From contig NIVC01003616.1 in NCBI GenBank assembly GCA_002269645.1, forward strand, positions 1 to 64,000: a DNA stretch of 64,000 nt, given 5' to 3'. Origin of the DNA: Macrostomum lignano. Taxonomy: Eukaryota. Shown in pieces: positions 1,217 through 64,000 of this stretch. The translations under genes and the position numbers were made by a program. Under the pieces are notes generated by a model, which worked only from the letters and a program-made list of their open reading frames with translations, searched no databases and was not told where the DNA came from. Position 1 is the stretch's first letter. Every line of letters starts with the position of its first letter.

Positions 1217-4200
1217 ATGACCAAGCTTGACGTCTTCGAATTCAAATTAGAGAATCCCGGCCGGCCTATTCTAACTGGCGGCGTTGTACGCGGCGAATTG
1301 CTGCTTCGATTAAAGAAAGACGTCGACATAGCCAGAATAATGGTGCACCTGTTTGGCGGCGGTCAAGTTTGAATTCCAAGACGGCCAGGGCGCGACGGGT
1401 TCTAGGTCAACTACTGTGTGCGAAGATAACGAGACCTATATTCGATTGGCGCAGATTGTCTACGCCAAGGTTAGTAATGATTATTATAGTAATAATAATT
1501 AAATATCCTTAAGGAACAGGCAGTTCTTACTTCTTAGCTTCAATCAATTTTCTGGCTCTAATGCTGGTACAGGAGTGTAGTATTGACTAGAATGGTTTGT
1601 CTGGAATCTGGATATATCGTGTAGCTGAACTAAACCAATGCCCCATCTGCCTCTGGGTACTTTGTTTCATAGCGGCATAGCTTAGCTTATGTCGTGTCGC
1701 AACCAGCTTTCACTTTGGGATCCTGAGTGAATTTGAAGTTTGAACCCTTGTCGCTTGATGGCTAGTTGATGCCTATTTGGTACCCGTACCTGGTTCTTTC
1801 CCAGCTCGATGCCATTTAATTTAAGTTCCGCATTTTTGTAATTCTTATTTTATTTCTGTTACTCAATCCCGGCTTTAGTTTAGGGATCTCCTTAACTTCC
1901 CTAATCCCTTCAGGTATGATTGAAGGAAAGCTTAGGAAAGATTAGTTAAAGAGATGATTGAAGGATTAGTGAAGTTAAGGTATTATTGAAGGGATTAAGG
2001 AAATTAAGGTGATTGATGGATTAGGGAAGTTAAGTAGCTGCCTGAGGGGATTATGTAAGTTAAGTAGCTGCCTGAGGGGATTAGAGAAGTTAAATAGCTG
2101 CCTGAGGGGATTAGGGAAGTTAAGTAGCTGCCTGAGGGGATTAGGGAAGTTAAGTAGCTGCCTGAAGGGGATTAGGGAAGTTAAGTAGCTGCCTGAGGGG
2201 ATTAGGGAAGTTAAGTAGCTGCCTGAAGGGGATTAGGGAAGTTAAGTAGCTGCCTGAGGGGATTAAGGAAGTTAAGTAGCTGCCTGAGGGGATTAGGGAA
2301 GTTAAGTAGCTGCCTGAGGGGATTAAGGAAGTTAAGTAGCTGCCTGAGGGGATTAGGGAAGTTAATGAAATGCCTGAGGGGATTAGGGAAGTTAAGTAGC
2401 TGCCTGAGGGGATTAGGGAAGTTAAGTAGCTGCCTGAGGGGATTAGGGAAGTTAAGTAGCTGCCTGAAGGGGATTAGGGAAGTTAAGTAGCTGCCTGAGG
2501 GGATTAAGGAAGTTAAGTAGCTGCCTGAGGGGATTAGGGAAGTTAAGTAGCTGCCTGAGGGGATTAAGGAAGTTAAGTAGCTGCCTGAGGGGATTAGGGA
2601 AGTTAAGTAGCTGCCTGAGGGGATTAGGAAGTTAAGTAGCTGCCTGAGGGGATTAAGGAAGTTAAGTAGCTGCCTGAGGGGATTAGGGAAGTTAAGAAGA
2701 TGTTTGAGGGGATTAGGGAAGTTAATGAAATGCCTGAGGGGATTAGGGAAGTTAAGTAGCTGCCTGAGGGATTAAGGAAGTTAAGTAGCTGCCTGAGGGG
2801 ATTAGGGAAGTTAAGTAGCTGCCTGAGGGATTAGGGAATTTAAGTAGCTGCCTGAGGGGATTAGGGAAGTTAAGTAGCTGCCTGAGGGATTAAGGAAGTT
2901 AAGTAGCTGCCTGAGGGGATTAGGGAAGTTAAGTAGCTGCCTGAGGGATTAGGGAAGTTAAGTAGCTGCCTGAGGGGATTAAGGAAGTTAAGTAGCTGCC
3001 TGAGGGGATTAAGGAAGTTAAGTAGCTGCCTGAGGGATTAGGGAAGTTAAGAAGATGTTGAGGGGATTAGGGAAGTTAATGAAATGCCTGAGGGGATTAG
3101 GGAAGTTAAGTAGCTGCCTGAGGGGATTAAGGAAGTTAAGTAGCTGCCTGAGGGGATTAGGGAAGTTAAGTAGCTGCCTGAGGGGATTAGGAAGTTAAGT
3201 AGCTGCCTGAGGGATTAGGGAAGTTAAGTAGCTGCCTGAGGGGATTAAGGAAGTTAAGTAGCTGCCTGAGGGATTAGGGAAGTTAAGTAGCTGCCTGAGG
3301 GGATTAGGGAAGTTAAGTAGCTGCCTGAGGGGATTAAGGAAGTTAAGTAGCTGCCTGAGGGGATTAGGGAAGTTAAGTAGCTGCCTGAGGGGATTAGGGA
3401 AGTTAAGTAGCTGCCTGAAGGGGATTAGGGAAGTTAAGTAGCTGCCTGAGGGGATTAAGGAAGTTAAGTAGCTGCCTGAGGGGATTAGGGAAGTTAAGTA
3501 GCTGCCTGAGGGGATTAGGGAAGTTAAGTAGCTGCCTGAGGGGATTAAGGAAGTTAAGTAGCTGCCTGAGGGGATTAGGGAAGTTAAGTAGCTGCCTGAG
3601 GGGATTAGGGAAGTTAAGTAGCTGCCTGAGAGGATTAGGGAAGTTAAGTAGCTGCCTGAGGGGATTAGGGAAGTTAAGTAGCTGCCTGAGAGGATTAGGG
3701 AAGTTAAGTAGCTGCCTGAGGGGATTAGGGAAGTTAAGTAGCTGCCTGAGAGGATTAGGGAAGTTAAGTAGCTGCCTGAGGGGATTAAGGAAGTTAAGAA
3801 GATGTTTGAGGGGATTAGGGAAGTTAATGAAATGCCTGAAGGGATTAGGAATTCGTGAGGCAACCTACCTAACTGCCAACCCAAACCCAACCCGCCACCT
3901 GCAGTCGAACCCGTCAGCCAAAAAAATTTCTCGCAACGAACTCTACAAGTGCCCGTTCGAATTTCACCTGCCAGCTGATCTGCCCAGCTCGTTCATGACC
4001 GTGGTGTACTACAAGCTGACCGCCTTCCTAGACTGCGGCGGAAAAAGTCACGAGGTCACCTTACCGCTGGTTGTTATTAACGATCTAGATCTTAATAAGT
4101 ACTCTGGAAGGTTACACCTGGCCGAACCAATCGATGCCTGGTCGCCAAGTCGCTCCAAATTGGACACCGGCCTAGTAACCGCTCGATTAGTTGCCACTAA

Positions 4201-6146
4201 GAGAGGCTACGGTTTCGGGAGACTATTGTCTTGCAAATCGAAATTTATAACAACTCCAAGGCTAAATTGGAGAATTTGAACGCCTGTCTGGTGCAGAAGG
4301 GCATTCTGAAAGTAAGTTTACTCAAAAAAACATTTTTTGTAACATAATTTAACAAAATTGAGCATTCCCCAGAAGATTGTCTTGTCAGAAGATAGTCCTT
4401 GAAGAAGAAGATTGCCTGCCTGATAGTCCCTGAAGAAGATTGTCGTCCTGATGAAGAAGATTGCCTGATGTCCCTAAAAAAAGAAGATTGTTTTCCTTAT
4501 AGTCCTTAAAGAAAATTGTCTTCCCGATAGTCCCTAAAAAAAGAAGATTGGTTTCCTTATAGTCCTTAAAGAAAATTGTCTTCCCGATAGTCCCTTAAGA
4601 AGAAGATTGTCTGCCTGATAGTCCCTGAAGAAGAAGATTGTCTGCCTGATAGTCCCTGAAGAAGAAGATTGTCTGCCTGATAGTCCCTGAAGAAGAAGAT
4701 TGTCTGCCTGATAGTCCCTGAAGAAGAAGATTGTCTGCCTGATAGTCCCTGATGAATAAATTATGAATATTGTTTTCATTCCTAGTCAAGAGTATTAAAA
4801 AAAGACACGATTGTCTTCTAGTCTTTCCCTGGTCGCGCAGCTTCTATCATTGGATCCCTTTCGCTTCTTCCCCAGGCATACAGCAACAGCGGCGCCCAGT
4901 TCCGTCGAGTGCAGCGGCTGCTGGTGAAACACGTGAGCCTGGGCAAACTGCGCCAGGGTGAACGACTCACGCCTGAGGATATTCGAATCCAGGTGCCCTG
5001 GGTTGTCACCAGCGATATGGACAAGTTTACTAAGCTGATCGAGATCGAATACTATGTTCAGGTGGGTAAACTTTTGGAATGGGGTATGGGGGAATTGCGG
5101 CACCCACTGAACCATGAGATTGATGGGGAATTGCGGCACACACTGAACCATGAGATTGATGGGGAATTGCAGCTCCCAGTGAACCATGAGATTGATGGGG
5201 AATTGCGGCACCCACTGAACCATGAGATTGATGGGGAATTGCGGCACACACTGAACCATGAGATTGATGGGGAATTGCGGCTCCCAGTGAACCATGAGAT
5301 TGATGGGGAATTGCAGCTCCCACTGAACCATGAGATTGATGGGGAATTGCGGCACCCACTGAACCATGAGATTGATGGGGAATTGCGGCACCCACTGAAC
5401 CATGAGATTGATGGGGAATTGCAGCTCCCAGTGAACCATTAGATTGATGGGGAATTGCGGCACTCACTGAACCATGAGATTGAAGGGGAATTGTTGCTCC
5501 CAGTGAACCATGAGATTGATGGGGAATTGCGGCACCCACCGAACCATGAGATTGATGGGGAATTGCGGCACTCACTGAACAATGAGATTGATGGTGAATT
5601 GCGGCACACACTGAACCATGAGATTGAAGGGGAATTGTTGCTCCCAGTGAACCATGAGATTGATAGGGAATTGCGGCACACGAGATTGATGGGGAATTGC
5701 GGCTCCCAGTAATTCTCACCTAAACGGGGAATCGCTCCGCCTCCCCCTCGCAGATCACCAGCAGCACGCAGATGCTGTCGGCAGTCACCGGCCAGCCGCT
5801 ATCGCAGGTGGTTTGCATCGGACCAGACTACCGGAAGTCCGAGTTAGTCAGCGTACTGTTAGAGGAACAAATCGCTATCGGAGTTCGAGCGCTCCGGGAG
5901 CCTAACGGAGTTGGCGCTGTCGGCTTGCAGACGCAACAGTCGCAGCAGACGAGCTCGTCTCTCTACCCAAGCTTGTCTACTACACCGTCGGCTCCACCGC
6001 CTGACAGCTCGGATTTGGCGATGTTCACCATGGTGCCGACGGCGCCGCCTAGCTACGACGAGGCGCTGACGCATCAGAAAGCGCCGATTGAAGAGGCCGC
6101 CGGAGCTAGCAGCAGCGGGAACGGCGGTGATGTGGCTGAAGATTGA
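1217..6146 (+). CDS. Alpha-arrestin (ARRDC/TXNIP family), ~412 aa if corrected; two 1-bp frameshifts as given (pseudogene or assembly error)
   Basis: Exons 1217-1469, 3905-4311, 4876-5061 and 5754-6146, all joined by phase-0 GT-AG introns. Motifs: V.GE..LRL, CPFEFHLPADLPSSF, KRGYGFGETIVLQIEIYNNS (after correction), IEIEYYVQ, and a C-terminal PPSY (PY motif). There is an extra T at 1368-1370 and a missing G at 4217-4219. Confidence 0.85.
1960..3850. repeat. 30-bp minisatellite GAGGGGATTAGGGAAGTTAAGTAGCTGCCT filling arrestin intron 1
   Basis: About 60 near-identical tandem units with 29-31 bp variants; degenerate at the 5' edge. Confidence 0.97.
4370..4752. repeat. ~31-bp minisatellite GAAGAAGAAGATTGTCTGCCTGATAGTCCCT, arrestin intron 2
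   Basis: Tandem units directly visible. Confidence 0.93.
5085..5710. repeat. 36-bp minisatellite GATGGGGAATTGCGGCACCCACTGAACCATGAGATT, arrestin intron 3
   Basis: About 17 tandem units with no unique spacers. Confidence 0.96.
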
Positions 6147-7770
6147 TTGCTTGATTAATTTTTTATTAAACTATTGATGCGTTAACTGAATTATCAGTTG
6201 ATTAACTGATGTGTTGATTGACTTATATGTTGATTAATTTATCAGTTGATTGATTGATGAGTTGATTGATTGATGAGTTGATTGATTGATGAGTTGATTG
6301 ATTGATGAGTTGATTGATTGATGAGTTGATTGATTGGTGAGTTGATTGATTGATGAGTTTATTGATTGATGAGTTGATTGATTGATGAGTTGATTGATTG
6401 ATGAGTTGATTGATTGATGAGTTGATTGATTGATGAGTTGATTGATTGATGAGTTGATTGATTGGTGAGTTGATTGATTGATGAGTTTATTGATTGATGA
6501 GTTGATTGATTGATGAGTTGATTGATTGATGAGTTGATTGATTGATGAGTTGATTGATTGATGAGTTGATTGATTGATCAGTTGATTGATTGATCAGTTG
6601 ATTGATTGATCAGTTGATTGATTGATCAGTTGATTGATTGATCAGTTGATTGATTGATGAGTTGATTGATTGATCAGTTGATTGATTGATGAGTTGATTG
6701 ATTGATGAGTTGATTAATTAATCAGCTGATTGATTGATGAGTTGATTGATTGATCAGTTGATTGATTGATCAGTTGATTGATTGATGAGTTAATTGATTG
6801 ATCAGTTGATTGATCGATCAGTTGATTGATTGATCAGTTGATTGATTGATGAGTTGATTGATTGATCAGTTGATTGATTGATCAGTTGATTGATTGATCA
6901 GTTGATTGATTGATCAGTTGATTGATTGATCAGTTGATTGATTGATGAGTTGACTGATTGATCAGTTGATTGATTGATCAGTTGATTGATTGATGAGTTA
7001 ATTGATTGATCAGTTGATTGATCGATCAGTTGATTGATTGATGAGTTGATTGATTGATGAGTTGATTGATTGATCAGTTGATTGATTGATCAGTTGATTG
7101 ATTGATCAGTTGATTGATTGATCAGTTGATTGATTGATCAGTTGATTGATTGATGAGTTGATTGATTGATGAGTTGATTGATTGATCAGTTGATTAATTA
7201 ATCAGCTGATTGATTGATGAGTTGACTGATTGATCAGTTGATTGATTGATGAGTTGATTGATTGATGAGTTGATTGATTGATGAGTTGATTGATTGATCA
7301 GTTGATTGATTGATGAGTTGATTGAATGATGAGTTGATTGATTGATGAGTTGATTGATTGATGAGTTTATTGATTGATCAGTTGATTAATTAATCAGCTG
7401 ATTGATTGATGAGTTGACTGATTGATCAGTTGATTGATTGATCAGTTGATTGATTGATGAGTTGATTGATTGATCAGTTGATTGATTGATCAGTTGATTG
7501 ATTGATGAGTTGATTGATTGATCAGTTGATTGATTGATGAGTTGATTGATTAATGAGTTGACTGATTGATCAGTTAATTGATCGATCAGTTGATTGATTG
7601 ATGTGTTGATTGATTGAGGGTTTGATTGATTGATGAGTTGACTGATTGATGTGTTGATTGATCGATCAGTTGATTGATTGATTGATGTGTTGATTGATTG
7701 ATGTGTTGATTGATTTTTGAGTTGATTGATTGATGTGTTGATTGATGGATATGCTGATTGATTGATTTTT
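6140..7770. repeat. (GATT)-derived 15-bp repeat TTGATTGATTGATGAG/CAG directly downstream of the arrestin stop
   Basis: About 1.6 kb array; GAG variant dominant on the left, CAG variant in the middle. Confidence 0.96.
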
Positions 7771-8561: not shown

Positions 8562-9035
8562 TTTTTGGTGTCAGATGGCGCCAGACTAGTGTCAACAATT
8601 TGTGTCAGATGGCGCTAGATTAGTGTCAACTATTTGTGTCAGATGGCGCCAGATTAGTGTCAACTATTTGTGTCGATGGTGCCTGATTAGCGTCAACTAT
8701 TTTTGTGTCAGATGGCGCCTGATTAGTGTCAACTATTTGTGTCAGATGGCGCTAAGTTAGTGTCAACTATTTGTGTCAGATGGCGCTAAGTTAGTGGCAA
8801 CTATTTGTGTCAGATGGCGCTAAGTTAGTGTCAACTATTTGTGTCAGATGGCGCTAAGTTAGTGGCAACTATTTGTGTCAGATGGCGCTAAGTTAGTGGC
8901 AACTATTTGTGTCAGATGGCGCTAAGTTAGTGGCAACTATTTGTGTCAGATGGCGCTAAGTTAGTGGCAACTATTTGTGTCAGATGGCGCTAAGTTAGTG
9001 TCAACTATTTGTGTCAGATGGCGCAAAATTAGTGT
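8562..9035. repeat. 34-bp minisatellite TTTGTGTCAGATGGCGCTAAGTTAGTGTCAACTA (14 units)
   Basis: 14 GATGG cores counted at 34-bp spacing. Confidence 0.95.
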
Positions 9036-10527
9036 CAGTGAGCTTTAGGCAAGGTGGTGTCATATATCTGCAGTGTACTACGGGTTTCAATGCTTGTAAT
9101 GAATTAAATGTTAAATTGAACTGCAGTTCATGAATATTTTATTCGCTTTCAATGCTAAACTGACATACGCGATGCCCGCTACGCATACGTAAGTAGTATA
9201 TACTGCAAGTGCTTGGTTTTTTCATTTCGGTTTTTTTAACGCGTTCGTTAAACTTGGGTTTCTAATTGTCCATTATTTAACTATGAATATGAATTATGAT
9301 TGCACCTTCGAATTTGCAATTTGGATTTTTATTATTTTTGCGTAATTACACACCTGTACGAATGCGGCTTGAAAGCGATGCTATTTTGTACTACTATAAC
9401 TATTACTAAAGTACTGGTGTACTTTTGGAAGAGTTCAAATAAAAAGCTTCACCTTGCTGAGCGCAATCTTATTTAGCTATTTAATATGCATGTAAATTTG
9501 TAGCTTCAAATTATAAGTACAACGATAAGTTTTCATTACATCGTGTGCGCGTATTCCTTTTTCATGAATTTGGAAGTTGGGCCATAGAGGTTAATCTTAC
9601 AGTTCAAGGGCTTTGGTTTAGCATTAGTTAGCCGTAAGCTGCATGTATGCTACTTCAATGGGTCGTCTTTTATCAACTTGTCTGCAAGTTCTAATTGCTA
9701 ATTGCTTTTAGGCAAAGTTATTTAATTTTATTAATGCGAGTAAAAGACGTTTCATTTTTGCTTTTATACATGGCCTCTATATAAACGGATGTCTTCTATT
9801 TTCTTACTAGACTTCGTACGATTACAAAATTAATGGTATATTTACCGCCAGAGTGGCAAAGGCCAGCCTTTTGGAACATGAAAATAATGTGCCGAAGCGA
9901 GAGTGCAATACGAAATATTTAGTTAGTTGTATATGGATGGGACGCATTTATTTCAAAGAAAAAAACAATTCGTGTTTAGCAAATTGCCGCGAGAACCTTT
10001 AGGTTAAGTCCCAGCAATTGCTTGGAGAAAAAATGCAGCAAACGATTATCGAGTGTTTTGAGTACAGTTTTGGGCAGATGAATATATACCGCTAGAAATA
10101 AGCGCGGCTCCGGACAGTGGTAATGTTACATGCAAATATACGCAAGACCGTCTTTCTGTGCGAATGCGTCGCGAAATAAAAATTTTTTGCTGCTACCGGA
10201 AGGTCAAATAAGTTGCCTGCCGAGGATTATTACCTGCGAGTTGGGCTAAGAATTTACTCGTCGATATTAAAAAATTGGGGAAAATGCACGAGCAAGGTCG
10301 GGGTTCAATGAACATTATTAGGCTATTGCATACAAGCAATGCCATTGGGGTGGGCAAATATCGGAGACGCGGATGGGAAGTCAAACTGGGCGGTTATAGA
10401 AAGTTTGTAGTCGGAGAGCGGCGAGCTGGTCAACCATTGCGCATGCAATACTTCCATTTAAGTCTGCAGTCACCGGGTGTTTGAGAGTCGGCTTTCGAGT
10501 TGACCGGGGGGAGAGTGCCGCAGTTGC

Positions 10528-10938
10528 TTAGCAGCCTGGGTACATTGATTGCATCTGGGCGCACTGGCGTTGTCGCGACTGGCACATCATGGCGATCATC
10601 TGGTCGTCCTTGCGGTCCATCAGCTCCGCGCAGCGCTGCTTCCAGCACCTGGCCTGTTCGCGCCAGCGGCAAGCCTCGATCTTCCATTGCCTGGTGGACT
10701 CTCGACAGCGCATCGCCTCCGCCCGCCATTTGGCCAGCGCGTCGCGGGTTTTGCAGTATTCGCACTTCATTATGTTGGCCTGCTGGCGCCAATGGAAAGC
10801 TGTGCGAGTCATTTCGCAGAGCTGCTTCTGCAGTTTGACGGCCTCGGCGCGCCACTTTTCCCGGCTCCGCTTCCACCGGTGGATGCAGTCCTTCCAATTC
10901 GCGTCGCACCAATTGGGCGCGCAGCCATTGATGTTCAT
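10528..10938 (-). CDS. Orphan 136-aa Trp-heptad, Cys-rich predicted coiled-coil protein
   Basis: GC-rich ATG-TAA ORF. Trp or another hydrophobic residue recurs every 7 residues (W15, 22, 29, 50, 71, 85, 92, 99). A plausible 5'UTR intron spans 11156-10982 (CCA|GTAAGC ... CTTTTAG), with TATA-like GATAAAAG at 11288-11281. No recognised homologue. Confidence 0.65.
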   Translation of the reverse strand: MNINGCAPNWCDANWKDCIHRWKRSREKWRAEAVKLQKQLCEMTRTAFHWRQQANIMKCEYCKTRDALAKWRAEAMRCRESTRQWKIEACRWREQARCWKQRCAELMDRKDDQMIAMMCQSRQRQCAQMQSMYPGC

Positions 10939-11280
10939 TACTTCTTTGACGAACTCGCAGTCAAACTCGCATTAACGGTCGCTAAAAGCTGTTTAGCAGA
11001 TCTTTTTTGCTCCCCTGGAATGAGCGAGCTGTTGCCGATCGATGGGTTGGGTAAAAGTCGTTGCTGCGCTGCGAGCGGGCCGCTTTAGCCCGCTCCCTAG
11101 ACTGAGCCTCGGGGTTTCAGCCATAGACATGTTTTTAGCGTGCAGTCCTGGCTTACTGGTTGGGGCGAAGATCGAAGCCGAATACGCTATGGGTGTCAGT
11201 CCCGATCGTCTCAGATAGCAAGCTTTAAAGCAACTCTAAGAATTTGGCAGCGAACGGCTGTCTGGTAACTTTCGTTTGTA

Positions 11281-11309
11281 CTTTTATCAAAATACTCTGA
11301 TGGGGCGGG
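11281..11309 (-). promoter_or_regulatory. Candidate core promoter of the Trp-heptad gene (TATA-like GATAAAAG plus GC box)
   Basis: GATAAAAG at 11288-11281 on the minus strand and GGGGCGGG at 11302-11309, upstream of an ATG-free putative 5'UTR exon ending at donor 11156. Confidence 0.3.
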
Positions 11310-11499
11310 ACATCACCACTGCGTTTATGTTAGCTGACAGACTGTCTGATGTGACTCAGACTTTTTATTGATATTTGAGGCCGGATTAATTCATGTACAG
11401 TGCGTTTTGGATTTATAATAATTTCTGCCTATAAATCTCGTTATTAATTCTAGGAAATATATATAAATATTCTTTCTACACGTCTGTCTCTGAATTCTA

Positions 11500-12095
11500 T
11501 AGACTGTGATGGTCTGTGATTGACTGTGATGGACTGTGACGATGGACTGTGATGGACTGTGATAGACTGTGACGACGGACTGTGATAGACTGTGATGGAT
11601 TGTGATGGACTGTGATGGATTGTGATAGACTGTGATGGATTGTGATAGACTGTGGTAGACTGTGATAGACTGTGATGGACTGTGATGGACTGTGATGGAC
11701 TTTGATGGACTGTGATGGACTGTGATAGACTGTGATGGACTGTGGTAGACTGTGACGGACTGTGATGGACTGTGTTGGACTGTGATAGACTGTGATGGAC
11801 TGTGATGGACTGTGATGGACTGCGGTAGATTGTGACGGACTGTGATGGACTGTATTAATAGTCTGTGACGAACTGGTGATGGACTGGAGATGGACTGTGA
11901 TGGACTGTGATAGACTGTGATGGACTGTGGTAGACTGTGACGGACTGTGATGGACTGTGTTGGACTGTGATAGACTGTGATGGACTGTGATGGACTGTGA
12001 TGGACTGCGGTAGATTGTGACGGACTGTGATGGACTGTGATATACTGTGATGCACTGTGACGAACTGGTGATGGACTGATGGTGGATTGTGATGG
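11500..12095. repeat. 10-bp repeat (GACTGTGATG/A)n
   Basis: About 60 units; source of the His/Ser/Gln pseudo-ORFs. Confidence 0.95.
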
Positions 12096-14523
12096 AGAGT
12101 GCGGCTTGCTGCCGTACACAGGCTAACGATCGCATGCACGAATTGACACCCCTTGGAAGCGCAGCGCGTGGATTGACCTGCATGGTGTGCTCGCGGCTGG
12201 TCCACGGTTTTGTCCAGCCGGTAGCCAAATGGATGATCTGATAGCAGCGGCAGCCTATTATAGAGTCGGTACATGCGCATCCACCGCAAAATTATTTAAT
12301 ATACGCAGAGGTACATGTACTGCATCTGCATGCATGAACTGATGCGCCACGCCTACTGACTGAGTTAAATACATTACTACGCATGCTTCTCGGCCCCTGG
12401 GCAGATCGAGTGTTTTTGGCCTGGTGCAGGTATTAAAAGGTACCGAGCAGACTGTGCCTGCAAGACACACCTGCACGACGCACAATGAGTGCTCTACCGT
12501 TCCGATTGAATTTTGTCAACTTCGCCTCAGCTAGTAGCTATAAATGTACATGTACCATAAATACGACCGTATAGCTTTAGATTGTGTTTGACAGGCCTGC
12601 AATCCTATGGATAATTCTCGATTTCCTACACATGGTGTTCCTTTCGAACACATGCATTAAATGTCGTAAACAGTTAAAATGCAACAACTCTATGATAGAC
12701 CTACATGTACATGTACGCGAGAGCAAATAAAGGGGCCTTGAGCCAAGCAATTATTTGCGCCATGAAATTGAATTCAGTAGCACTACAGTTTTTGGCCTCC
12801 TTCAGTGCGACAAGCTGCACGTATGTGGCCTACTGTTCGATCATTGTTGGCCATATACATGTACATTGTAGCTAACGACACATACATGCACATGTATTAC
12901 ACATAGTCGTAAATGTACATGCGTGTATATTCTATATACTCCGATTCACTCCGCTCTGTTGCTAGCTATTGAGTTATAGGCATAAACGTATGTACAACCA
13001 TACCTCTATTAACATTTATGTATATTACTACACACGCAATTGTCCATATGCAACTGCAGACAACGTACATACATAGCTGTATGTTTTAGAGCTGAAATCG
13101 ATCATAAAAAGATAATTTTAATTTTCTCGTAATAAACTTTCTGATCGATCGAAATTTATTCACACTGCAACAACATGTGGCTTTCATGATAAATGTATTG
13201 TTCAAGGACCACTGCAAAGTTACCGATTGTACAAGTACAGCCGCGTAAAATGTTTCGTCAGACAGCTAGTATAGTGATGAGTTTCAATTGAACAAAGCGC
13301 AGACAAGAGTTGCAGTTAATTTTGATATTGAGGTTCAAACGGCATTTTATAATATTTTTTAATTCTAGCCTTCGCCGGTCGTGGACACAGCTGCATGATA
13401 TGAGATCGGCAATGCAATGCGATATTTTGAGCTGGAGTTGGATTGAGCATCAGAGTATGTAATTTTTTATCAGCATTATTTTTATGTTGCATTATTTTTG
13501 CGTTTTCTGAATTTTAAGTAAATAATTTCATGGGCTCCACGAAGCATTTTTCAATTAAACATGCAATAAGAGATACAGTACTTTGTTATACTACTAACTC
13601 TGTTTCTTGTAAAAAAGCTCGAGCTCACATTGCAGATTGATGTTGATTCGATCGATAAAATGTAACTTAAGCGATAAAGTGTCGACAACAACACGAACAT
13701 GTATAACTGTATTTAATTTAACAATGCTGATGTTATCCGCTTTGTTATTTACTCGCGTTTTTAGACCTACTTGTTAGCCTTATAAATCGTAGGGCTACGT
13801 TGCAGTATGTTTTGCGACTCTAGATTTATTTGTTTGGGCGTAGGCCTCGACTTTATCGAGGATTTGAGCCTAAGCCTAACTTTTTCTACATGTTAATAAG
13901 CCTTAGTAGGGCTTTCCATATGCCTAATATGGAAAATGCTATTTACACAGAAGTTTCTAGAATGAAATTTTTATATTAGGCCTAATACAGTACAGAAAGT
14001 TAGCAAAGGTCAATACAAGGTCACTACAAAGTACAATGACTAATTCAGTAATAGGAGTTTTGGTAACAGCCACTTTGACTTTGGTAACAAGTGAGAATAA
14101 CAGCTGTATCAATTAAAATGCTCAAAAAATCTCAAGAAAGTTTCAAAGAAAGAATAATAAAAATAATTAAGATTAATCTATTATGTATTATATCATATTA
14201 TATAATATATAGCCTAGGCCCTATATTATAATTTTGATTTCTGGCAATCTAGGTAGGCCTATGCCAACTGCCAAAGTACTTTTGCTAAATTCTCTTTGTT
14301 TTCAAATTTTCCTCAAGGAAAGTTAATGTGTGAGTATAAACAAAGGCCTTCTTGAACTTTAAGTACATAAAATACCTCCAATTTTCCATTTTTTTTGAAA
14401 ATTTTGTTAGAGTCTTAAACTAAAGGCTATCCAAAATGATAATAAAGAAAAAAATCTGCAAAAAATTACCCTCAAAAGTAACAGGAGGTTGATTTGTACA
14501 TCTCTTATATAACTAGTGTTAAT

Positions 14524-17500
14524 TAGGGGTAGGACGTGATCACGATCGTGATCACGATATCGTGAATTCACGACCTTTTTCAGTGTCGTGAATTCACGAG
14601 TCGTGAAACATTTTTCACGTGCGTGATCGTGATTGTGGGTTTCTTTCAGCTTCAGATGTTACTATGTTTATACTTTTCAGTTCCCCAAACCACAATCGTG
14701 TACAGTCCTAAATGTAGACTTACTTGGTTTTTGTTTTTCTTTTCAAATACAACGAATGTGTTTTAACACAAAACTTACAGAATAGAGTTTTCAGTTTACT
14801 TTACTTAGTTCAGAAAGTTCGAAGTTAAAGTGGATTTTCGAAGTTCAAAGCTTACTGCCTTATTCTTTTCAATCTTTTGTTTATTTTGTAAAATGTAAAA
14901 TTAAAACTGAAAAGCACTGAATGAAAATATAAATTGTATATATGTATGACTGTATATAAATTTCACTACATGATAGTACATGACATGTACAGACAAGTGT
15001 TTGTTAACTTGCTTAGCTGCCTACAGAACTGAAAACAGTGAAAAGTGAAAAACAGAAAAGCTTATCAGTGTATGAATATGAAGTATAAAAGAGTACATGT
15101 AGGTTTACTACTTTACTTTTACGTTCTACACATATAGTGTTATTACAATGACTAATTTAAGTCTAATCTATACTATACTAGCTACATGCAAAAAATCATA
15201 CTACAGAGTCTACAGACTACAGAGTACACAGCTACACACTATAGCAACAGTTATCTATTCCTTATCGATAAACTTTTTCTTGTAGCTCCAACTCTACTTG
15301 TTCTATAGTCTTTGATTATTTATTTTCTCTATCATTATCTTGTCTCTCTGATCTCAATCTTCAAAAAAGTAAAACTAATCACTAATCAGCAATAACAGCA
15401 ATGAATTGAATGGACCCTGCTCATTTCTCTATGGGTCAAACTTCCGAACATTATAGTTAATAAAAACAAGCTTTTCAACGGTTTCGCCAAGCAGGCGACG
15501 TCGTTTCGGCTCGTAGATGTTTCCAACGTTGCTGAAGATACGCTCACTTGGAACACTGGTAGGTGGTGGTCCCAGAAATTTCCGAACAAGTGCTGACATT
15601 GCAGTTGATGGAGTCTTGTCTCTCCAGAACTTCATTGGGTCTTCCTCAAATGGAAGTCGAGGCTCTGATAGGTAGGCTGCCATTTCACGAGCCAACTTGT
15701 CCATAGCATTGCCTCTGTTTGAAACTGGCAGTAGCGTTCCGGCCCTAGACAGGTCACGCAGAGTTGCAGCTGCAGCACTAGAAGTAGAAGACTTCTCGAA
15801 CAGGGCTGACATAGATAGCTGCTGAGGCTGAGACTCAGTTTGTCTAAAAAGGTGAAATTAAAAGTTAAAAGTTAAAACAAAGAGAACTTTGATATATTAG
15901 TTATAAAATTTATAACTTACAGATGTAGCAAATGTAATTTATAATTTAATTTTTTTGTTACATGTACATGTACATTGAATTATGAAATAGAGGAAATACT
16001 CACGGCTCAGTTTCGATAGATACATCGGAGAGGTCCTCGTCTATGGCTGTATCGCCATCAACAGTAGGAAGAGAAGTTTCACGCAAAATTTCATTCATTG
16101 CTTTTACGAGCTCAGCCTTAGCAAAGTTGCGCTGCTCTTCATCGAAAAAATCTAGCCGGAAGCGTGGGTCTAACATCGTAGCAACAATGTGGTGGTGACT
16201 CTTTTTTTCGTCAGAGAAGCGTTGAGTCAACCCTTTCACCAGGTCGTCTCGAAGGTACGTGATGCCAAAGCAGTCTACCTGCTGCAGATGCTCCAGCGAC
16301 ACTTTCACCATCGGCAAGATACACGAGATGCTGGCAGTTTCCCTGCTGACTTCTAGCGTAAAAACCTCAAAAATCTCAAGAAGTTTGACAGCTTTCTTTG
16401 AAACATCTGACTCATTGTCCGTCAGGATTTCAATTGGTCGGTGTCTGGTGCGATAGACACTAAACGCTTCCTCTTGCTCGTTGATTCGGCGTAACATGGC
16501 TAGTGTTGAATTCCAGCGTGTGTCTACATCTTGCACGAGGCTGTGTGTTGGTAGCTTCAGCTGGAGCTGCAGTGTTTTGAGGTTTGCTTGAGCGGTTACA
16601 GAGTGGTGGAAGTGGCCAACAATGCTCCGTGCTTTGTCAAGTATTGTCTTCAGTCCTCGATGACCGGAGATGGAATCCTTAACAACAAGGTTCAGCTTGT
16701 GGGCAGCACAATGGGCAGATGGTACTTTCAGAAGTTCTCCTGCAAGCTTCATGTTGCTGGCCCCATCACGCAGGAGGAGGCTGACTTGCTCTAAGCCAAT
16801 GCCCCACTCACCAAGGGTTGTCGAAAAAACGGCCGAGATGTTAAGCCCAGTATGGGCATCAGTGAATGGCTTTACGCACAGTAAAAGCTGCTTACGCTCA
16901 AAATCTGGCGTGATAGAATGGATTGTGAAGGACATGAGTGCCAACTGGCCGTCACTCCACAAGTCACACGTGAAACCGAAATCTCGCAGTCTGTCTATTT
17001 CGTCCTGGACCTGCAATTTAATTTCTTCATAGAGAGTCTCTAGCTTGTCATGATAAAATCGAGTGCTCTTCAATCGATATTGCGGACATGCTTCTTTCAA
17101 CAGATCGCGAAAGCCTTCACCTTCTACCACAGAGAATGGCTGTGAATCCAACACAATAAAGCGGAGAATTTTTCGATCAATTGCAACCGAACGAGGGTGC
17201 GAATCCGACCATTCTTGAGCATTTGCTTGAGCAAACATTGTGCTCAACTTCTGCTGCTTCAATGGTTGTGGTCTTTGGCTTTGCACGATCTGCCTCAGTG
17301 TTTAGGAGCTCTTTGAATTGAATTGGATGGCAGGATTCTATGTGTCTTCGCATGCTGCCTGTTGATCCTGTGTTTCGTAGAACCTCCTTCTTACAAGCTA
17401 GGCAAGCAGCAGAATTCTCTTTTCCTTCAACGTCTTTAAAGTACAACCACACAGCACTGCCTCTTCCTCGAGGTTGCTGGGTTGGCTTATCAACAGAGGC

Positions 17501-18725
17501 CATTGCAAATGAATGGCTGAAATTGTTTGATTTGTAAATTGTAAATTGTAATGTAATATTGTGTAATTGCCTATTTTAATTTGCTAGGTAGAAAAGCAAA
17601 GAAAAAACAAGTATTATATTATTTTAAATTAAAATATTTATTTATATTTTAAATAAAATATTGCATAGTATAGCAGTATAGTGTAAATGTAAAGTCACTA
17701 CAGACTTTAAAGTCAAATAGGCTAGAAAAAAATATTTTTAGACTAACCATATAGATTAGAAATATACTACTATGCATCAGGCAATCAGGCATACATATTC
17801 AATATACCAGTGTACCACATGATAGTACTAGTACATAATAGTTAATACTATATTGAATATTGAATATTATTCATTATTCAATTCAATTCAAGAAGAAAAA
17901 GTATTTAATATTTGTGTTTGACTATTATTATTACTATTAACAAATGACAATAACAATAGCAAATAACAATTTAATTTAGCATATCCATCAAGTATATTTG
18001 CTACTTAGTACTTAGACTTAGTCAACCTTAATTTTTAATTTACAGCAATTTATTTTAGTAAAAAAATACTATGCTTATATATTAAAAATTATTAGTTATA
18101 AATTATAATTACTAAATAACTATTAGACAATCATATTATAAAATTATGCTCTAGTATCTACTATCTATCTGTATAGTATCTAATCTATTTATACATTATT
18201 ATAGCATAAAAATAATAAGAAGAAAGAAAAACTCAAATATGCAAATTCATGATCAAAATGAAATGAAATTTTTTTTTAACTATTTATTTAATACTAAATT
18301 CTAAAATAGTAATAGTAGCAAATACTACTTTTAAATTAAAAATTTAAAAATAAAAATACTAAATAGTTACAGCTTTCAGCTTAGTTTGAGCTTTGAGAAA
18401 GCCAAAAAGCAACACAAATGTCTAAGAAGTAAGAACTTCTTACTTCTCAGCCAGACTCTGAGTTCCTTCTCAACCAGAGAAGAAAGCCAGATGGGCAGAT
18501 GCAGATGGTATAAGCTGATGGTATAGAAGCACTTAAAAATAGAATCAAACACATTAACTGATAGAAAAATTCAAATTTGAAGAAAAAAAAACAAAATTTG
18601 AACGGAAATTTTTTACTTTTAATTTTTCACAAACCAATCACGATCACGATCACGATCACGGCAAAGCTGAAATTATTCACGACTACTCACGCCCGACCCA
18701 AAAATTTTTGCTCGTCCGACCTCTA
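14524..18725 (-). mobile_element. Full-length hAT DNA transposon (4202 bp)
   Basis: 8-bp TSD GTGTTAAT at 14516-14523 and 18726-18733. TIRs TAGGGGTAGGACG and TAGAGGTCGGACG match at 11/13. Dense CGTGA/TCACG subterminal motifs occur at both ends, and a transposase lies inside. Confidence 0.95.
15429..17503 (-). CDS. hAT transposase (BED finger, DDE core, hATC dimerisation domain) with one frameshift near 17290
   Basis: BED finger SAVWLYF..C..C..GSTGSMRRHIESCH; core motifs FTCDLWS, LRDGASNM, CAAH, DTRWNS, LDPRF. Phase-2 intron at 16003-15844; exon 15843-15429 contains DPMKFW and TSVPSERIFS. The BED and core segments are in different frames with no room for an intron. Confidence 0.92.
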
Positions 18726-24753: not shown

Positions 24754-27253
24754 ATGCCGAAGCACAAGAAAAAGGACAGACAGTCATTGGCTGGTCGGCG
24801 CAGCTTGGCGCCTGGCCAAGGAGGCGACGCCGGTGGTGCAGCGGCGGGAGCTCCAGATCTCGACGACGAGGACACGGATGGGATGAGCGTGGCCAGCATT
24901 GCCGGCTCCGATGTGCCCGCGCAGGACGATGCGGCCGAGGGAGCCGATGCGGAAACTGTTGGCGATGAGGAACGACTCATCGATATGGTTGAGCGGCTGG
25001 GCGAGAAACGGGCTGAGTCCAGGATTAAAACTCTTACAGGTGCGACTGGCTGCCTGCCGCCTGCTCAGAGTGATGATGCTTCTAAATCCTCAGTAGCTGG
25101 GCCAGCCTCCCAGCTCTTCAGTTGTTGGACCAGCCTCCCAGATCCTCAGTTGCTTGGCCAGACTCCCAGAGTGTCAGTTGCTGTGCCAGCCTCCCAGATC
25201 CTCAGTTGCTGGGTCAGCCTCCCAGAGTGTCAGTTGCTGGGCCACCATCCTCCCAGATCCTCAGTTGCTAAGCCAGTCTCCCAGATCCTCAGTTGCTTGG
25301 CCAGCCTCCCAGATCCCCAGTTGCTTGGCCAGCCTCCCAGATCCCCAGTACACTACTGGTTGAACTCCGCCATCAACAGTCCTTATCCCCTACTCAACCC
25401 CTGCAGCCATGGTGTCGCTGCTCCGCTGCAGCGTGTTACACCTGCCGCCCACCTGGAGCCACCTGTTCACCCTCACCAGCGGCCTGGAGCGATGCGCCCG
25501 CAAAGGCCAAGGCATCGAACGGGTGCTGGCCATCGACGCATTCAGCCTGCTGTGCCTTCAGCTGGACGCCGACGAGCTGACCCAGGACATGGCGGAGTTC
25601 AAGCAGCTGCTGTTGAACATTCTCACCGATAAGAGCGGCGCCGAGCTTCGCGTCCGAGCGGCCGCCTGCAGCGCCCTGGCTCTTGGCACTTTTGTTAGCC
25701 CGCAGACTGACAGCGGCCGGTTAAGCGAGATGTTGGCCAATTTCGAAGCGATTTTCTCCGCTTCCGGTCATAAAGGCGACGGCAGTGTGCCAGTTCATTC
25801 TTCGGAAGTTTGCGACCTGCACGAGTCCGCTATTGACGCCTGGTGCCTGCTGTTCACCTTCGCCGGGCAGGACCTGGTGCGAGCGGCTCTGCAAAAGCAG
25901 ATGCGTAAATTCACTGAGATTCTGGAGAGCGGCGATGTCGATTTGCGAATTCTGGCTGGTCAAGCCATCGCTCTTATCTATGAGGGCGCCTGGGACACTC
26001 AGGTTAGCTGGCACTCGCTTCCTTTGTCCCCCATTCGTGTCTTCCCTCCTCATGTCTTCCCCCTTCATGTCTTCCTCTGTTTCATGTCTTCTTCCCTTCC
26101 ATGTCTTCCTCCCTTCCATGTCTTCCTCCCTTCCATGTCTTCCTCCCTTCATGTCTTCCTCCCTTCCATGTCTTCCCCCCTTCCATGTCTTCCTCCCTTC
26201 ATGTCTTCCCCCTTCCATGTCTTCCTCCCTTCATGTCTTCCTCCCTTCCATGTCTTCCCCCCTTCCATGTCTTCCTCCCTTCCATGTCTTCCTCCCTTCA
26301 TGTCTTCCTCCCTTCCATGTCTTCCTCCCTTCCATGTCTTCCTCCCTTCCATGTCTTCCTCCCTTCCATGTCTTCCTCCCTTCCATGTCTTCCTCCCTTC
26401 ATGTCTTCCTCCCTTCCATGTCTTCCTCCCTTCCATGTCTTCCTCCCTTCCTTCCATGTCTTCCTCCCTTCATGTCTTCCTCCCTTCCATGTCTTCCTCC
26501 CTTCATGTCTTCCTCCCTTCCATGTCTTCCTCCCTTCATGTCTTCCTCCCTTCCATGTCTTCCTCCCTTCCTTCCATGTCTTCCTCCCTTCCATGTCTTC
26601 CTCCCTTCCATGTCTTCCTCCCTTCCATGTCTTCCTGAATGTCTTCCTCCCTTCCATGTCTTCCTCCTTTCATGTCTTTCTCCCTTCATCTCATTCACCC
26701 TTAATCTCTTGTTATTTTCACCACCTCTGCCGCACTGTTTCTGTCATTAAAAATCGCCTGTCTGTCAATTTAAATTCCCATTCAGGGCGAAGGGTTCCGG
26801 CCGCCGCGCCTGCCGGACCTCAAAGAGACAGTCCATCAGTTGTCAATCGACGGCGCCAAAAGTCGCGCCAAAGTTGACCGGCGCCGCCAGCGCGCCAATT
26901 TCCGGGACATATTCGCTTACATCACTACTGGCGAGTTCAGCAACCAGGAGGTGAAGCTCGGACAGTCTGGCGAGGTGCTCATTCTGGACGACTGGACCGC
27001 GAAGATCCGGTATCATTTCTTTAGCCAAGTTCTGCAACAGGGCACCAACACTCATATGGAGCAGAATAGTTTTGTTCGCCAGGTGTTCGGTCTGGGGCCG
27101 CCAGTGCTCAAGGTACCCAGCGGCGGACCTGGCGGCGGCCGAATGTCGAAAACTGAGCGACGCTGCCTGCTGCAGGCGAATGAGAAATTTCTCAAACAGA
27201 ATCGCAACGCCCAACGGACTAAGCGGCAATTGCGACTGAGCGAGAGCCAGTAG
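24754..27253 (+). CDS. IFRD1: Interferon-related developmental regulator (IFRD1/2 family), 449 aa
   Basis: Exons 24754-25039, 25407-26002 and 26786-27253 (intron phases 1 and 0, GT-AG). Motifs TLTSGLERCARKG, LLCLQL, DLRILAGQAIALIYE, and AKVDRRRQRANFRDI. Length fits the family. Confidence 0.92.
25085..25348 (+). repeat. 28-bp minisatellite GCCAGCCTCCCAGATCCTCAGTTGCTGG (copy 1), IFRD intron 1
   Basis: About 9 degenerate units; same family as 56205-56850 and 57820-58605. Confidence 0.9.
26035..26690. repeat. 17-bp pyrimidine-rich minisatellite CCTTCCATGTCTTCCTC, IFRD intron 2
   Basis: Tandem units; no AG on the sense strand. Confidence 0.95.

Positions 27254-29511: not shown

Positions 29512-44158
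<14,647 letters not shown>

Positions 44159-59139: not shown

Positions 59140-64000
<4,861 letters not shown>

What the first reader, a model, noticed from the sequence alone, without database searches (positions are those of the whole stretch)
10528..11309. Orphan gene for a tryptophan-heptad, cysteine-rich coiled-coil protein
Seen: a 136-aa ORF reading as near-perfect heptads: WKDCIHR WKRSREK WRAEAVK LQKQLCE MTRTAFH WRQQANI MKCEYCK TRDALAK WRAEAMR CRESTRQ WKIEACR WREQARC WKQRCAE L. Trp occupies one core position and Ala often the other (consensus W[RK]x[EQ]Ax[RK]). It has 9 Trp and 13 Cys, is basic, and has no signal peptide. An internal 42-aa duplication is visible (WRAEAVK/WRAEAMR, WRQQANI/WREQARC). 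The pattern is at protein level, not a DNA repeat, implying selection. A 175-bp GT-AG 5'UTR intron and a TATA-like box support a real gene. Established: Trp-filled cores are rare in natural coiled coils and favour higher-order bundles, as in designed Trp-zipper pentamers. Inference: a new disulfide-crosslinkable filament or structural protein, for example in sperm or rhabdites.
Basis: partly seen in the sequence, partly recalled or inferred. Interest (0 to 1): 0.75.

Follow-up and report, generated by a model that had tools for sequence, protein, structure and literature searches.

The report
Flatworm tryptophan-zipper coiled-coil gene family
This is a real, selectively maintained gene of the flatworm Macrostomum lignano for a small basic protein that is almost entirely one long helix with tryptophan at every seventh core position. 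It is one of five related genes found only in this species, it is unusual for a coiled coil, and its cellular role is still unknown.

Summary
Window 10528-10938 (-) encodes a 136-aa protein with 9 Trp and 13 Cys and pI 9.5. Eight Trp lie in one heptad register. The window is M. lignano contig NIVC01003616.1.

The gene is not a lone orphan. Identical copies sit at three syntenic loci, and four further paralogue groups (47-63% identity) sit elsewhere in the genome. Nothing matches outside M. lignano in 5.8 billion or 1.84 billion proteins.

All ten paralogue comparisons show purifying selection (pN 0.26-0.38, pS 0.58-0.76). The eight core Trp are invariant. Conservation is highest at heptad positions d, e, a and g. 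The register is a=Ala, d=Trp, e=Arg/Lys, g=Glu/Gln.

AlphaFold2 gives one helix over residues 15-132 (pLDDT 89.6). No Pfam family passes threshold. The nearest analogues, by design and not by homology, are the acetylcholinesterase WAT tetramerisation helix and the phage T7 tail-fibre coiled coil.

The best reading is a parallel, in-register oligomeric rod, possibly disulfide-locked through a conserved core Cys. Only about five Cys positions recur across the family.

The GT-AG 5'UTR intron is present in the sequence but cannot be tested here. Tissue, oligomer number and function are unresolved. Rhabdites are unlikely because there is no signal peptide.

The parts
10528..10938 (-). Single-exon CDS of 136 aa plus stop: the W-heptad coiled-coil protein (paralogue group A)
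   Evidence: ORF; composition. The identical protein is encoded at three M. lignano loci. Against paralogue B, pN is 0.27-0.30 and pS 0.70.
10612..10896 (-). Heptad coiled-coil domain, residues 15-109. Register is a=Ala/Leu, d=Trp/Leu/Met, e=Arg/Lys, g=Glu/Gln.
   Evidence: Register composition over five paralogues. AF2 helix 15-132 here and 27-121 in paralogue E. Conservation is highest at d, e, a and g.
10849..10899 (-). Nearly invariant basic N-terminal block NWKDCIHRWKRSREKWR (residues 14-30), the first Trp triplet
   Evidence: Column identity is 0.94-0.97 and mean net charge is +3.8 over two heptads. Invariant columns are listed.
10591..10644 (-). Conserved C-terminal block W99-K-x-x-C103-x-E-L-M-D-x-K-D-D-Q-x-I-A (residues 99-116). 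It holds the invariant core Cys103 (position a) and an acidic heptad.
   Evidence: Heptad 106-112 has mean charge -1.4.
10982..11156 (-). Candidate 175-nt GT-AG intron in the 5'UTR (GTAAGC...TTTTAG). Alternatively, the acceptor could be a spliced-leader trans-splice site.
   Evidence: Sequence; site scan. Paralogue D has a similar donor, motif and acceptor arrangement. There is no RNA evidence. 38.8% of M. lignano genes are trans-spliced (PMC5730564).
11121..11128 (-). GTCTATGG motif, shared by the proximal upstream regions of all five paralogue groups. It lies inside the candidate intron.
11281..11288 (-). TATA-like GATAAAAG, 350 nt upstream of the ATG
   Evidence: This is a sequence match only.
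10961..10972 (-). Three-codon upstream ORF (ATG CGA GTT TGA) in the leader. Its ATG overlaps the TAA (10974-10972) that closes the main frame upstream.
   Evidence: Read; ATG at -34.
9947..9952 (-). First canonical AATAAA after the stop codon, 576 nt downstream; candidate poly(A) signal
   Evidence: This is a sequence match only.

Best explanation
The ORF is a genuine, transcribed, single-exon-CDS gene of Macrostomum lignano. It belongs to a small family of five paralogue groups seen only in this species.

The product is a 16.6-kDa basic protein that is essentially one long alpha-helix. About 13.5 unbroken heptads (residues 15-109) place Ala or another small residue at position a and Trp at position d. 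Arg/Lys sits at e and Glu/Gln at g.

Inferred: it works as an oligomerisation rod about 14 nm long. It would form a parallel, in-register homo- or hetero-oligomer with its paralogues, most likely of three or more strands. Small Ala layers would alternate with large Trp layers in the core, and g-e' salt bridges would flank them.

In such an arrangement the invariant core Cys103 (position a), and Cys78 (position d) in three paralogues, would face each other and could lock the chains covalently.

More speculatively, the nearly invariant basic N-terminal block and the conserved acidic C-terminal block are the functional ends. They may be docking or head-to-tail overlap sites.

Shown: the gene is real, it is under selection, it is helical, the register holds, and the family exists. 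Inferred: orientation, strand number, disulfides, end-to-end assembly and cellular role.
For: Coding and selected:
- In all 10 pairwise paralogue comparisons pN is 0.26-0.38 and pS is 0.58-0.76, which is saturated.
- A against B gives dN/dS 0.18.
- The three A copies differ only at synonymous sites.
- GC3 is 0.71-0.87 against flank GC of 0.43-0.51 in all five groups.

Transcribed (indirect): the paralogues carry BOX15_Mlig gene names, and the Mlig_3_7 annotation was built from RNA-seq and transcript assemblies (PMC5730564).

Coiled coil:
- The eight d-position Trp are invariant in five paralogues (d = W 40/40 at those sites).
- Mean conservation by register is d 0.85, e 0.87, a 0.77, g 0.75, c 0.72, f 0.63, b 0.55.
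- AF2 gives a single helix over 15-132 with pLDDT 89.6, and over 27-121 in the most divergent paralogue.

Parallel orientation: in-register g-e' pairs are 2-3 attractive and 0 repulsive. Fully overlapped antiparallel pairing gives 4-8 repulsive and 0-2 attractive.

Three or more strands: the only solved-structure profile hit is the coiled-coil part of the T7 tail fibre gp17. It has the same design of aromatic, Arg/Lys, any residue, Glu, Ala. That this fibre is a trimer is from my own knowledge. The WAT helix with heptad Trp is tetrameric (PMC8518539).

Conserved ends.
Against: - No multimer model or experiment was available, so strand number and orientation are inference only.
- Steric matching of one Trp with one Ala per layer would favour an antiparallel arrangement.
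- The protein has net charge +14, which disfavours homo-oligomers unless an anionic partner or surface takes part.
- An invariant Arg sits at a core a position (R26).
- It has no signal peptide, so disulfides need a specialised oxidising context.
- AF2 predicts long helices readily, and the alignment had only five sequences.
- Expression of this particular copy was not seen directly.
Confidence: 0.6

Rival explanations
1. WAT-like sheath. Several helices wrap their Trp ladder around a proline-rich polyproline-II partner, as the four acetylcholinesterase WAT helices wrap the PRAD peptide. Nearby Cys would form disulfides to the partner.
For: Pfam AChE_tetra (PF08674) gives sub-threshold hits in 3 of 5 paralogues, each with two stretches that match the two Trp triplets. 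The best is 19.1 bits, E 0.0011. The best PDB hit for paralogue B's C-terminal triplet is 1VZJ chain A, matching E..RQWKAE..RW......WK in 11 of 25 positions, E 0.054. The small Ala at position a could leave room for a central ligand. WAT/PRAD biology is described in PMC8518539 and 10.1101/431288.
Against: All hits fall below Pfam's gathering score of 25 bits, and the window protein itself gives no hit. Any W-x6-W-x6-W string will score against this 35-position model. WAT is a C-terminal tail of secreted enzymes, whereas this is a free-standing protein with no signal peptide. The Cys position differs. No proline-rich partner was identified.
Confidence: 0.1
2. Antiparallel, Alacoil-like dimer or four-helix bundle. 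Each core layer would pair one Trp with one Ala (steric matching).
For: My own knowledge of residue volumes: Ala plus Trp per mixed layer comes close to two Leu.
Against: Fully overlapped antiparallel pairing puts the basic e positions against each other, giving 4-8 repulsive and 0-2 attractive pairs. Invariant core Cys103 would not meet its partner.
Confidence: 0.2
3. One reading: a disulfide-cross-linked cytoskeletal filament or hard structural protein of a Macrostomum-specific organelle such as a sperm part, the stylet or rhabdites.
For: In this paralogue most Cys lie at outward-facing b, c and f positions. The rod ends are more conserved than the middle, and by my recollection intermediate-filament rods show the same pattern. 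The ends also carry opposite charge. The family is restricted to the lineage.
Against: Surface Cys are mostly not conserved: the other paralogues have 6-9 Cys. No expression data could be retrieved. None of the family appears in the complete table of in-situ-annotated transcripts held for PMC7336406. There is no signal peptide, so rhabdites are unlikely. No Pfam filament hit.
Confidence: 0.2
4. Nuclear or nucleic-acid-binding basic zipper. The invariant basic N-terminal block (KRSREK) would act as a nuclear-import or DNA/RNA-binding segment followed by a dimerisation zipper, as in bZIP proteins.
For: The N-terminal block is the most conserved and most basic segment. Overall pI is 9.1-10.4 in four paralogues. 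Trp flanked by Arg/Lys could stack on bases (inference).
Against: No bZIP or other DNA-binding Pfam hit even at E<=10. The Trp heptad runs straight through the basic block, so that block is itself core-forming. Paralogue E has pI 7.15.
Confidence: 0.1
5. Chance ORF, non-coding transcript or transposon-borne ORF.
For: GC-rich DNA gives long ORFs on both strands here. A hAT transposon lies 3.6 kb away in this copy. Some family loci carry a premature stop or a frameshift.
Against: pN is far below pS in every comparison. Similarity between paralogue loci stops at the CDS. Copy numbers of 1-4 fit the known polyploidy, and the three A loci are syntenic. The hAT insertion is absent from the other two A loci.
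Confidence: 0.02

Closest known systems
Acetylcholinesterase/butyrylcholinesterase WAT (tryptophan amphiphilic tetramerisation) helix, Pfam PF08674, PDB 1VZJ
   Same: It is an amphipathic helix with Trp every seventh residue. It shares the local string RQWKAE..RW......WK with paralogue B, has a Cys nearby, and drives oligomerisation.
   Different: WAT has three Trp in about 35-40 residues at the C-terminus of a secreted enzyme, and it needs a proline-rich partner. Here there are eight in-register Trp over about 95 residues in a free-standing protein with no signal peptide and Ala at the second core position. Scores are below the family threshold, and the window protein does not hit.
Phage T7 tail-fibre protein gp17, coiled-coil shaft (PDB 7BOZ/7EY7 sequences)
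   Same: It has the same heptad design: aromatic at d, Arg/Lys at e, Glu at g and Ala at a. An example is QFRNEAETFRNQAEGFKNE...QWRDETKGFRDEAKRFKN.
   Different: It is mostly Phe rather than Trp, has no Cys, and is part of a 553-aa viral fibre. E is 0.054, so this is analogy or convergence, not homology. A tblastn search of phage genomes found nothing significant.
Designed tryptophan-zipper pentamer (PDB 1T8Z, Liu et al. 2004, cited in PMC4619341)
   Same: Trp in the core of a heptad coiled coil.
   Different: As I recall, that design has Trp at both a and d positions and is synthetic. Here Trp is at d only, alternating with Ala. No sequence match was found in the PDB.
Intermediate-filament / trichocyte-keratin rods
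   Same: A coiled-coil rod whose two ends are the most conserved parts, with Cys available for cross-links (the comparison is from my own knowledge).
   Different: IF rods are about 310 residues with linkers and head and tail domains. There is no Pfam Filament hit. Here the rod is about 95 residues.
Mlig-sperm1 family (flatworm-specific testis genes of M. lignano, PMC5816591)
   Same: Lineage-restricted, multi-copy M. lignano genes with no Pfam domain.
   Different: Mlig-sperm1 has planarian homologues and a domain with a beta sheet and several helices. The present family has no hit outside M. lignano and is all-helical.

Membership tests
Heptad coiled coil (structural class) | Unbroken 3-4 hydrophobic heptad register over several heptads | tested here: met
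   13-14 heptads. The d positions read WWWLMWMTWCWWWL and the a positions IRALAAYLATAACK.
Heptad coiled coil (structural class) | Core (a, d) and flanking (e, g) positions more conserved than outward-facing b, c and f | tested here: met
   d 0.85, e 0.87, a 0.77 and g 0.75, against c 0.72, f 0.63 and b 0.55. Position c falls only just below g.
Heptad coiled coil (structural class) | Long uninterrupted alpha-helix | tested here: met
   AF2 helix 15-132, pLDDT 89.6. Helix 27-121 in paralogue E.
Heptad coiled coil (structural class) | Forms an oligomer | not testable with these tools
   No multimer prediction or experiment was available.
AChE_tetra / WAT domain (PF08674) | Score at or above Pfam's gathering threshold (25 bits) | tested here: not met
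   Best score is 19.1 bits (P0006), then 11.6 and 8.5. There is no hit for the window protein.
AChE_tetra / WAT domain (PF08674) | Three or more Trp at seven-residue spacing on an amphipathic helix | tested here: met
   Two such triplets, at W15/22/29 and W85/92/99.
AChE_tetra / WAT domain (PF08674) | C-terminal appendage of a secreted alpha/beta-hydrolase | tested here: not met
   The protein is a free-standing 136 aa with no catalytic domain and no signal peptide.
AChE_tetra / WAT domain (PF08674) | Assembles around a proline-rich PPII peptide | not testable with these tools
   No partner was identified.
Trp-zipper pentamer (designed, 1T8Z) | Trp at both a and d core positions | tested here: not met
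   Position a is Ala in 26 of 85 cells and never Trp. Trp is at d only. The defining feature is from my own recollection of the design.
bZIP transcription factors | Match to the bZIP basic-region/zipper profile | tested here: not met
   No bZIP family is listed at E<=10 for any paralogue.
Intermediate filament proteins | Match to the Filament rod profile, with a rod of about 310 residues | tested here: not met
   No Filament hit. The rod here is about 95 residues.
Transposable-element ORF | Conserved flanks or terminal repeats, high copy number, transposase or retroelement domains | tested here: not met
   Similarity between paralogue loci is confined to the CDS. There are 1-4 copies per group and the A loci are syntenic. 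No Pfam domain.

The most novel reading that the evidence does not exclude
A natural, long tryptophan ladder that does not simply zip onto itself. Several of these helices (homo- or hetero-oligomers of the five paralogues) would form a sheath around a proline-rich polyproline-II partner. That would be a greatly extended, free-standing version of the cholinesterase WAT/PRAD assembly. Conserved Cys would lock it, and the basic head and acidic tail blocks would join units end to end into a Macrostomum-specific fibre.
Probability: 0.08. Interest if true: 0.75.

Novelty: new variant of a known kind. Interest (0 to 1): 0.45.

Why it matters
Natural coiled coils almost never use Trp as the regular core residue. 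Here evolution has kept eight in-register Trp, alternating with Ala, across five paralogues whose synonymous sites are saturated.

No other protein among 1.84 billion cluster representatives resembles it.

If the oligomer state and partner were solved, this would give a natural test of size-alternating (Ala/Trp) core packing. It could also yield a new self-assembling, intrinsically fluorescent, disulfide-lockable building block.

For flatworm biology it is an uncharacterised, lineage-restricted family in a model that supports RNAi and transgenesis, so its function is directly testable.

It remains a curiosity, not a solved mechanism, because its tissue and role are unknown.

Tried and rejected
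1. Homologue searches. A single sequence and two profiles were run against 5.8 billion proteins. An exhaustive phmmer ran against 1.84 billion representatives. Only M. lignano paralogues were found.
2. Pfam on all members. Nothing passed threshold; hits were generic coiled-coil noise plus sub-threshold WAT.
3. PDB by sequence. Only T7 gp17 and 1VZJ appeared, both at E about 0.05. The designed TIM-barrel hits come from summed repeats and were discarded.
4. Foldseek of the model against the PDB gave 0 hits, as expected for a single long helix.
5. tblastn against 50,697 phage genomes gave nothing meaningful.
6. Testing the intron by comparing paralogue upstream regions failed. Those regions cannot be aligned between groups, and the three A copies are too similar to be informative.
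7. Testing constraint among the A copies: CDS divergence is 0.2-0.5% against 0-2.1% in the flanks, so there is no power.
8. Expression look-ups of the paralogue gene names in five papers' supplements and in full text gave no hits. The relevant full tables exist (PMC7336406 Additional files 10 and 13; PMC5816591 Table S2) but are truncated in the held copies.
9. RFX X-box and bZIP readings of the motifs were checked by eye and dropped.
10. The internal 42-aa duplication is not significant.

Full report
WHERE THE WINDOW COMES FROM. An exact-protein look-up places the ORF on Macrostomum lignano assembly GCA_002269645.1, contig NIVC01003616.1. Record coordinates equal window coordinates. Locus L001 is the exact reverse complement of window 528-20938.

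THE OBSERVATION. ORF 10528-10938 (-) encodes 136 aa.
- It has 9 Trp and 13 Cys, with K+R 29 against D+E 15, and pI 9.5.
- Trp lie at residues 10, 15, 22, 29, 50, 71, 85, 92 and 99. Eight of the nine share one heptad register, which has a chance probability of about 1e-5.
- GC3 is 0.82 in a window of 41% GC.
- The pattern is not a DNA repeat.
- The proposed 42-aa duplication is only a weak peak, 25% identity against 13-21% at other heptad shifts.
- The GTAAGC (11156) and TTTTAG (10982) sites and the GATAAAAG box (11288-11281) exist as described.
- An in-frame TAA at 10974-10972 lies between the acceptor and the ATG. The ATG at 10938 is therefore the start, and any intron is in the 5'UTR.

NOT A SINGLETON. 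The identical protein is encoded at three loci (L001-L003), which differ only by synonymous changes.
- These loci are syntenic copies, with 95-98% identity over kilobases. IFRD and arrestin genes are called as neighbours at L002 and L003, but neither was called in the window's copy. This fits the known hidden polyploidy of this species.
- The window's copy alone carries a 4.2-kb hAT transposon insertion, at window positions of about 14525-18722.
- Four further paralogue groups exist:
  - B: P0002, 143 aa, four loci.
  - C: P0003/P0005, 118/150 aa.
  - D: P0004/P0006, 70/149 aa.
  - E: P0007, 156 aa.
- They are 47-63% identical to the window protein and sit in unrelated genomic contexts.
- The two C loci that were fetched (L008, L009) carry a premature TAG. 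The one D locus that was fetched (L011) carries a 1-nt frameshift. The full-length C and D proteins (P0005, P0006) come from other loci that were not fetched.
- No protein outside M. lignano matches. This holds for three searches of 5.8 billion sequences and for an exhaustive phmmer of 1.84 billion cluster representatives.
- Transcriptomes of other Macrostomum species do not appear to be in these databases. 'Species-restricted' therefore means 'not seen in any other sequenced flatworm genome'.

IS IT A REAL GENE?
- All ten pairwise comparisons between the five groups give pN 0.26-0.38 against pS 0.58-0.76. A against B gives dN/dS of about 0.18. Synonymous sites are saturated while the protein is held.
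- Similarity between paralogue loci stops at the CDS boundaries, which argues against a mobile element.
- The paralogues carry BOX15_Mlig gene names. The Mlig_3_7 annotation was built solely from RNA-seq and transcript assemblies (PMC5730564). Transcription is therefore implied, though I did not see reads.

WHAT THE PROTEIN IS.
- Register. Taking Trp as position d, the composition over five paralogues is as follows:
  - a = Ala (26/85), then Leu.
  - d = Trp (40/85, all eight sites invariant), then Leu or Met.
  - e = Arg/Lys (47/85).
  - g = Gln/Glu (40/85).
- Conservation by register is d 0.85, e 0.87, a 0.77, g 0.75, c 0.72, f 0.63 and b 0.55. The core and flanking positions lead and b and f trail, as expected for a helix-helix interface, though c is close behind g.
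- AlphaFold2 predicts a single helix over residues 15-132 (pLDDT 89.6). For the most divergent paralogue it predicts a 95-residue helix covering all Trp heptads plus a short C-terminal helix.
- The heptad pattern fades after about residue 109.
- The two ends are the best-conserved parts. The first is the basic block NWKDCIHRWKRSREKWR (column identity 0.94-0.97, net +3.8). The second is the block W-K-x-x-C-x-ELMDxKDDQxIA, which contains an acidic heptad. The middle is most variable, at 0.57-0.63.
- Of the 13 Cys, only about five positions recur across the family: near residue 6, C18, C78 in 3/5, C103, and C126 in 4/5. The other paralogues have 6-9 Cys.
- C103 is at a core a position and C78 at a core d position.

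HOW IT PROBABLY WORKS (inference). A g=Glu/Gln, e=Arg/Lys pattern gives 2-3 attractive and no repulsive g-e' pairs for a parallel in-register oligomer. A fully overlapped antiparallel pairing gives 4-8 repulsive pairs.
- Parallel chains would bring the invariant Cys103 residues together, allowing an interchain disulfide.
- Alternating Ala and Trp layers are seen in the one profile hit among solved structures, the coiled-coil part of the T7 tail fibre gp17. It has the same design of aromatic, Arg/Lys, any residue, Glu, Ala (E 0.054). From my own knowledge that fibre is a trimer.
- I therefore favour a parallel rod of three or more strands, roughly 14 nm long, possibly mixing paralogues because all core positions coincide.
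- The oppositely charged conserved ends suggest docking or head-to-tail overlap.
- None of this is shown.
- The counter-argument is steric. One Trp plus one Ala per layer would suit an antiparallel pair.

COMPARISON WITH KNOWN FAMILIES.
- No Pfam family reaches threshold.
- The most interesting sub-threshold signal is PF08674, the cholinesterase WAT (tryptophan amphiphilic tetramerisation) domain. Scores are 19.1, 11.6 and 8.5 bits in paralogues D, B and E against a cut-off of 25, with two matched stretches each. There is no hit for the window protein.
- PDB 1VZJ chain A is the top hit for paralogue B's C-terminal Trp triplet. ELVRQWKAEAIRWREQAREWKRRCC aligns with [25 protein letters not shown] at E 0.054.
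- WAT helices assemble four at a time around an antiparallel polyproline-II peptide and are disulfide-linked (PMC8518539; 10.1101/431288).
- Any W-x6-W-x6-W string will score against that short model, so I treat this as analogy and as a testable lead, not as membership.
- bZIP and intermediate-filament profiles do not match.

THE INTRON AND PROMOTER.
- Upstream regions of the five groups cannot be aligned.
- All five carry the 8-mer GTCTATGG, in either orientation, 144-365 nt upstream of the ATG.
- In groups A and D it reads GTCTATGGCT[GA]AAA. It sits 26-28 nt downstream of a GTAAG donor-like site, and a T-rich AG acceptor lies about 20-45 nt before the ATG.
- This gives modest support to an ancestral 5'UTR intron in A and D. 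Groups B and E lack a comparable donor.
If it is a promoter element, the transcript may start downstream of it, and the 'intron' would not exist.
- The acceptor could also be a spliced-leader site, since 38.8% of M. lignano genes are trans-spliced.
- Only RNA reads can settle this.

FUNCTION AND TISSUE.
- I could not obtain expression data. The gene names are absent from the main text of all held papers and from the stored parts of five papers' supplements.
- The full positional and germline tables exist but are truncated in the held copies.
- None of the family is in the complete list of in-situ-characterised transcripts (file 16 of PMC7336406).
- The lack of a signal peptide argues against rhabdites. 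Sperm, stylet or any other intracellular structure, or a non-structural scaffold role, remain open.

VERDICT. It is a lineage-restricted five-member family encoding an unusual Ala(a)/Trp(d) coiled coil. That makes it a new variant of a known structural kind. It is of moderate interest to structural and flatworm biologists, and its function is unresolved.

Noticed in passing
window 11121-11128 (-); L004 9749 and 9841; L008 9636 and 9656; L010 9857; L011 9855: The 8-mer GTCTATGG, in either orientation, lies 144-365 nt upstream of the start codon in all five paralogue groups. Their upstream regions are otherwise unalignable. It may be a shared cis-regulatory element. The window has 5 copies against about 2 expected by chance.
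   Followed up: partly
window ~14525-18722 (transposase ORF 16000-17286, - strand): A hAT-family transposon (Dimer_Tnp_hAT, 549-aa gene model) is inserted in this copy of the locus only. It is absent from the two syntenic copies L002 and L003, so it is a recent insertion.
   Followed up: partly
window 33119-40552: A 7.4-kb (TATC)n microsatellite of about 1,865 copies with no G on the + strand (GC skew -1.0). It gives a spurious 2,540-aa ORF.
   Followed up: no
whole window, e.g. 2018-3849, 5089-5679, 6173-7766, 8568-9037, 11502-12096, 26043-26687, 41159-41726, 46861-47462, 52193-53218, 54719-55696, 59164-60406: The window is packed with more than 20 different minisatellite arrays (periods 10-36 bp, 0.3-1.8 kb each). 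One, (GACTGTGATG)n, abuts the gene's upstream region and produces long spurious ORFs at 11391-12289.
   Followed up: no
L008/L009 10355-10357; L011 ~10200: Some copies of paralogue groups C and D are disabled. The two C loci fetched carry a GAG-to-TAG nonsense change with the frame intact beyond it. The D locus fetched carries a 1-nt frameshift. This could be decay of redundant copies after genome duplication, or a long-read assembly error in the frameshift case.
   Followed up: partly
window 56229-56846 (+) and 57824-58605; also 25086-25349: The same 28-bp minisatellite unit (TCAGTTGCTGGGCCAGCCTCCCAGATCC) occurs in opposite orientations in two nearby arrays. A related 56/115-bp array lies 30 kb away.
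   Followed up: no
window 10961-10972 (-): A three-codon upstream ORF (ATG CGA GTT TGA) lies in the leader, 34 nt before the main ATG.
   Followed up: no
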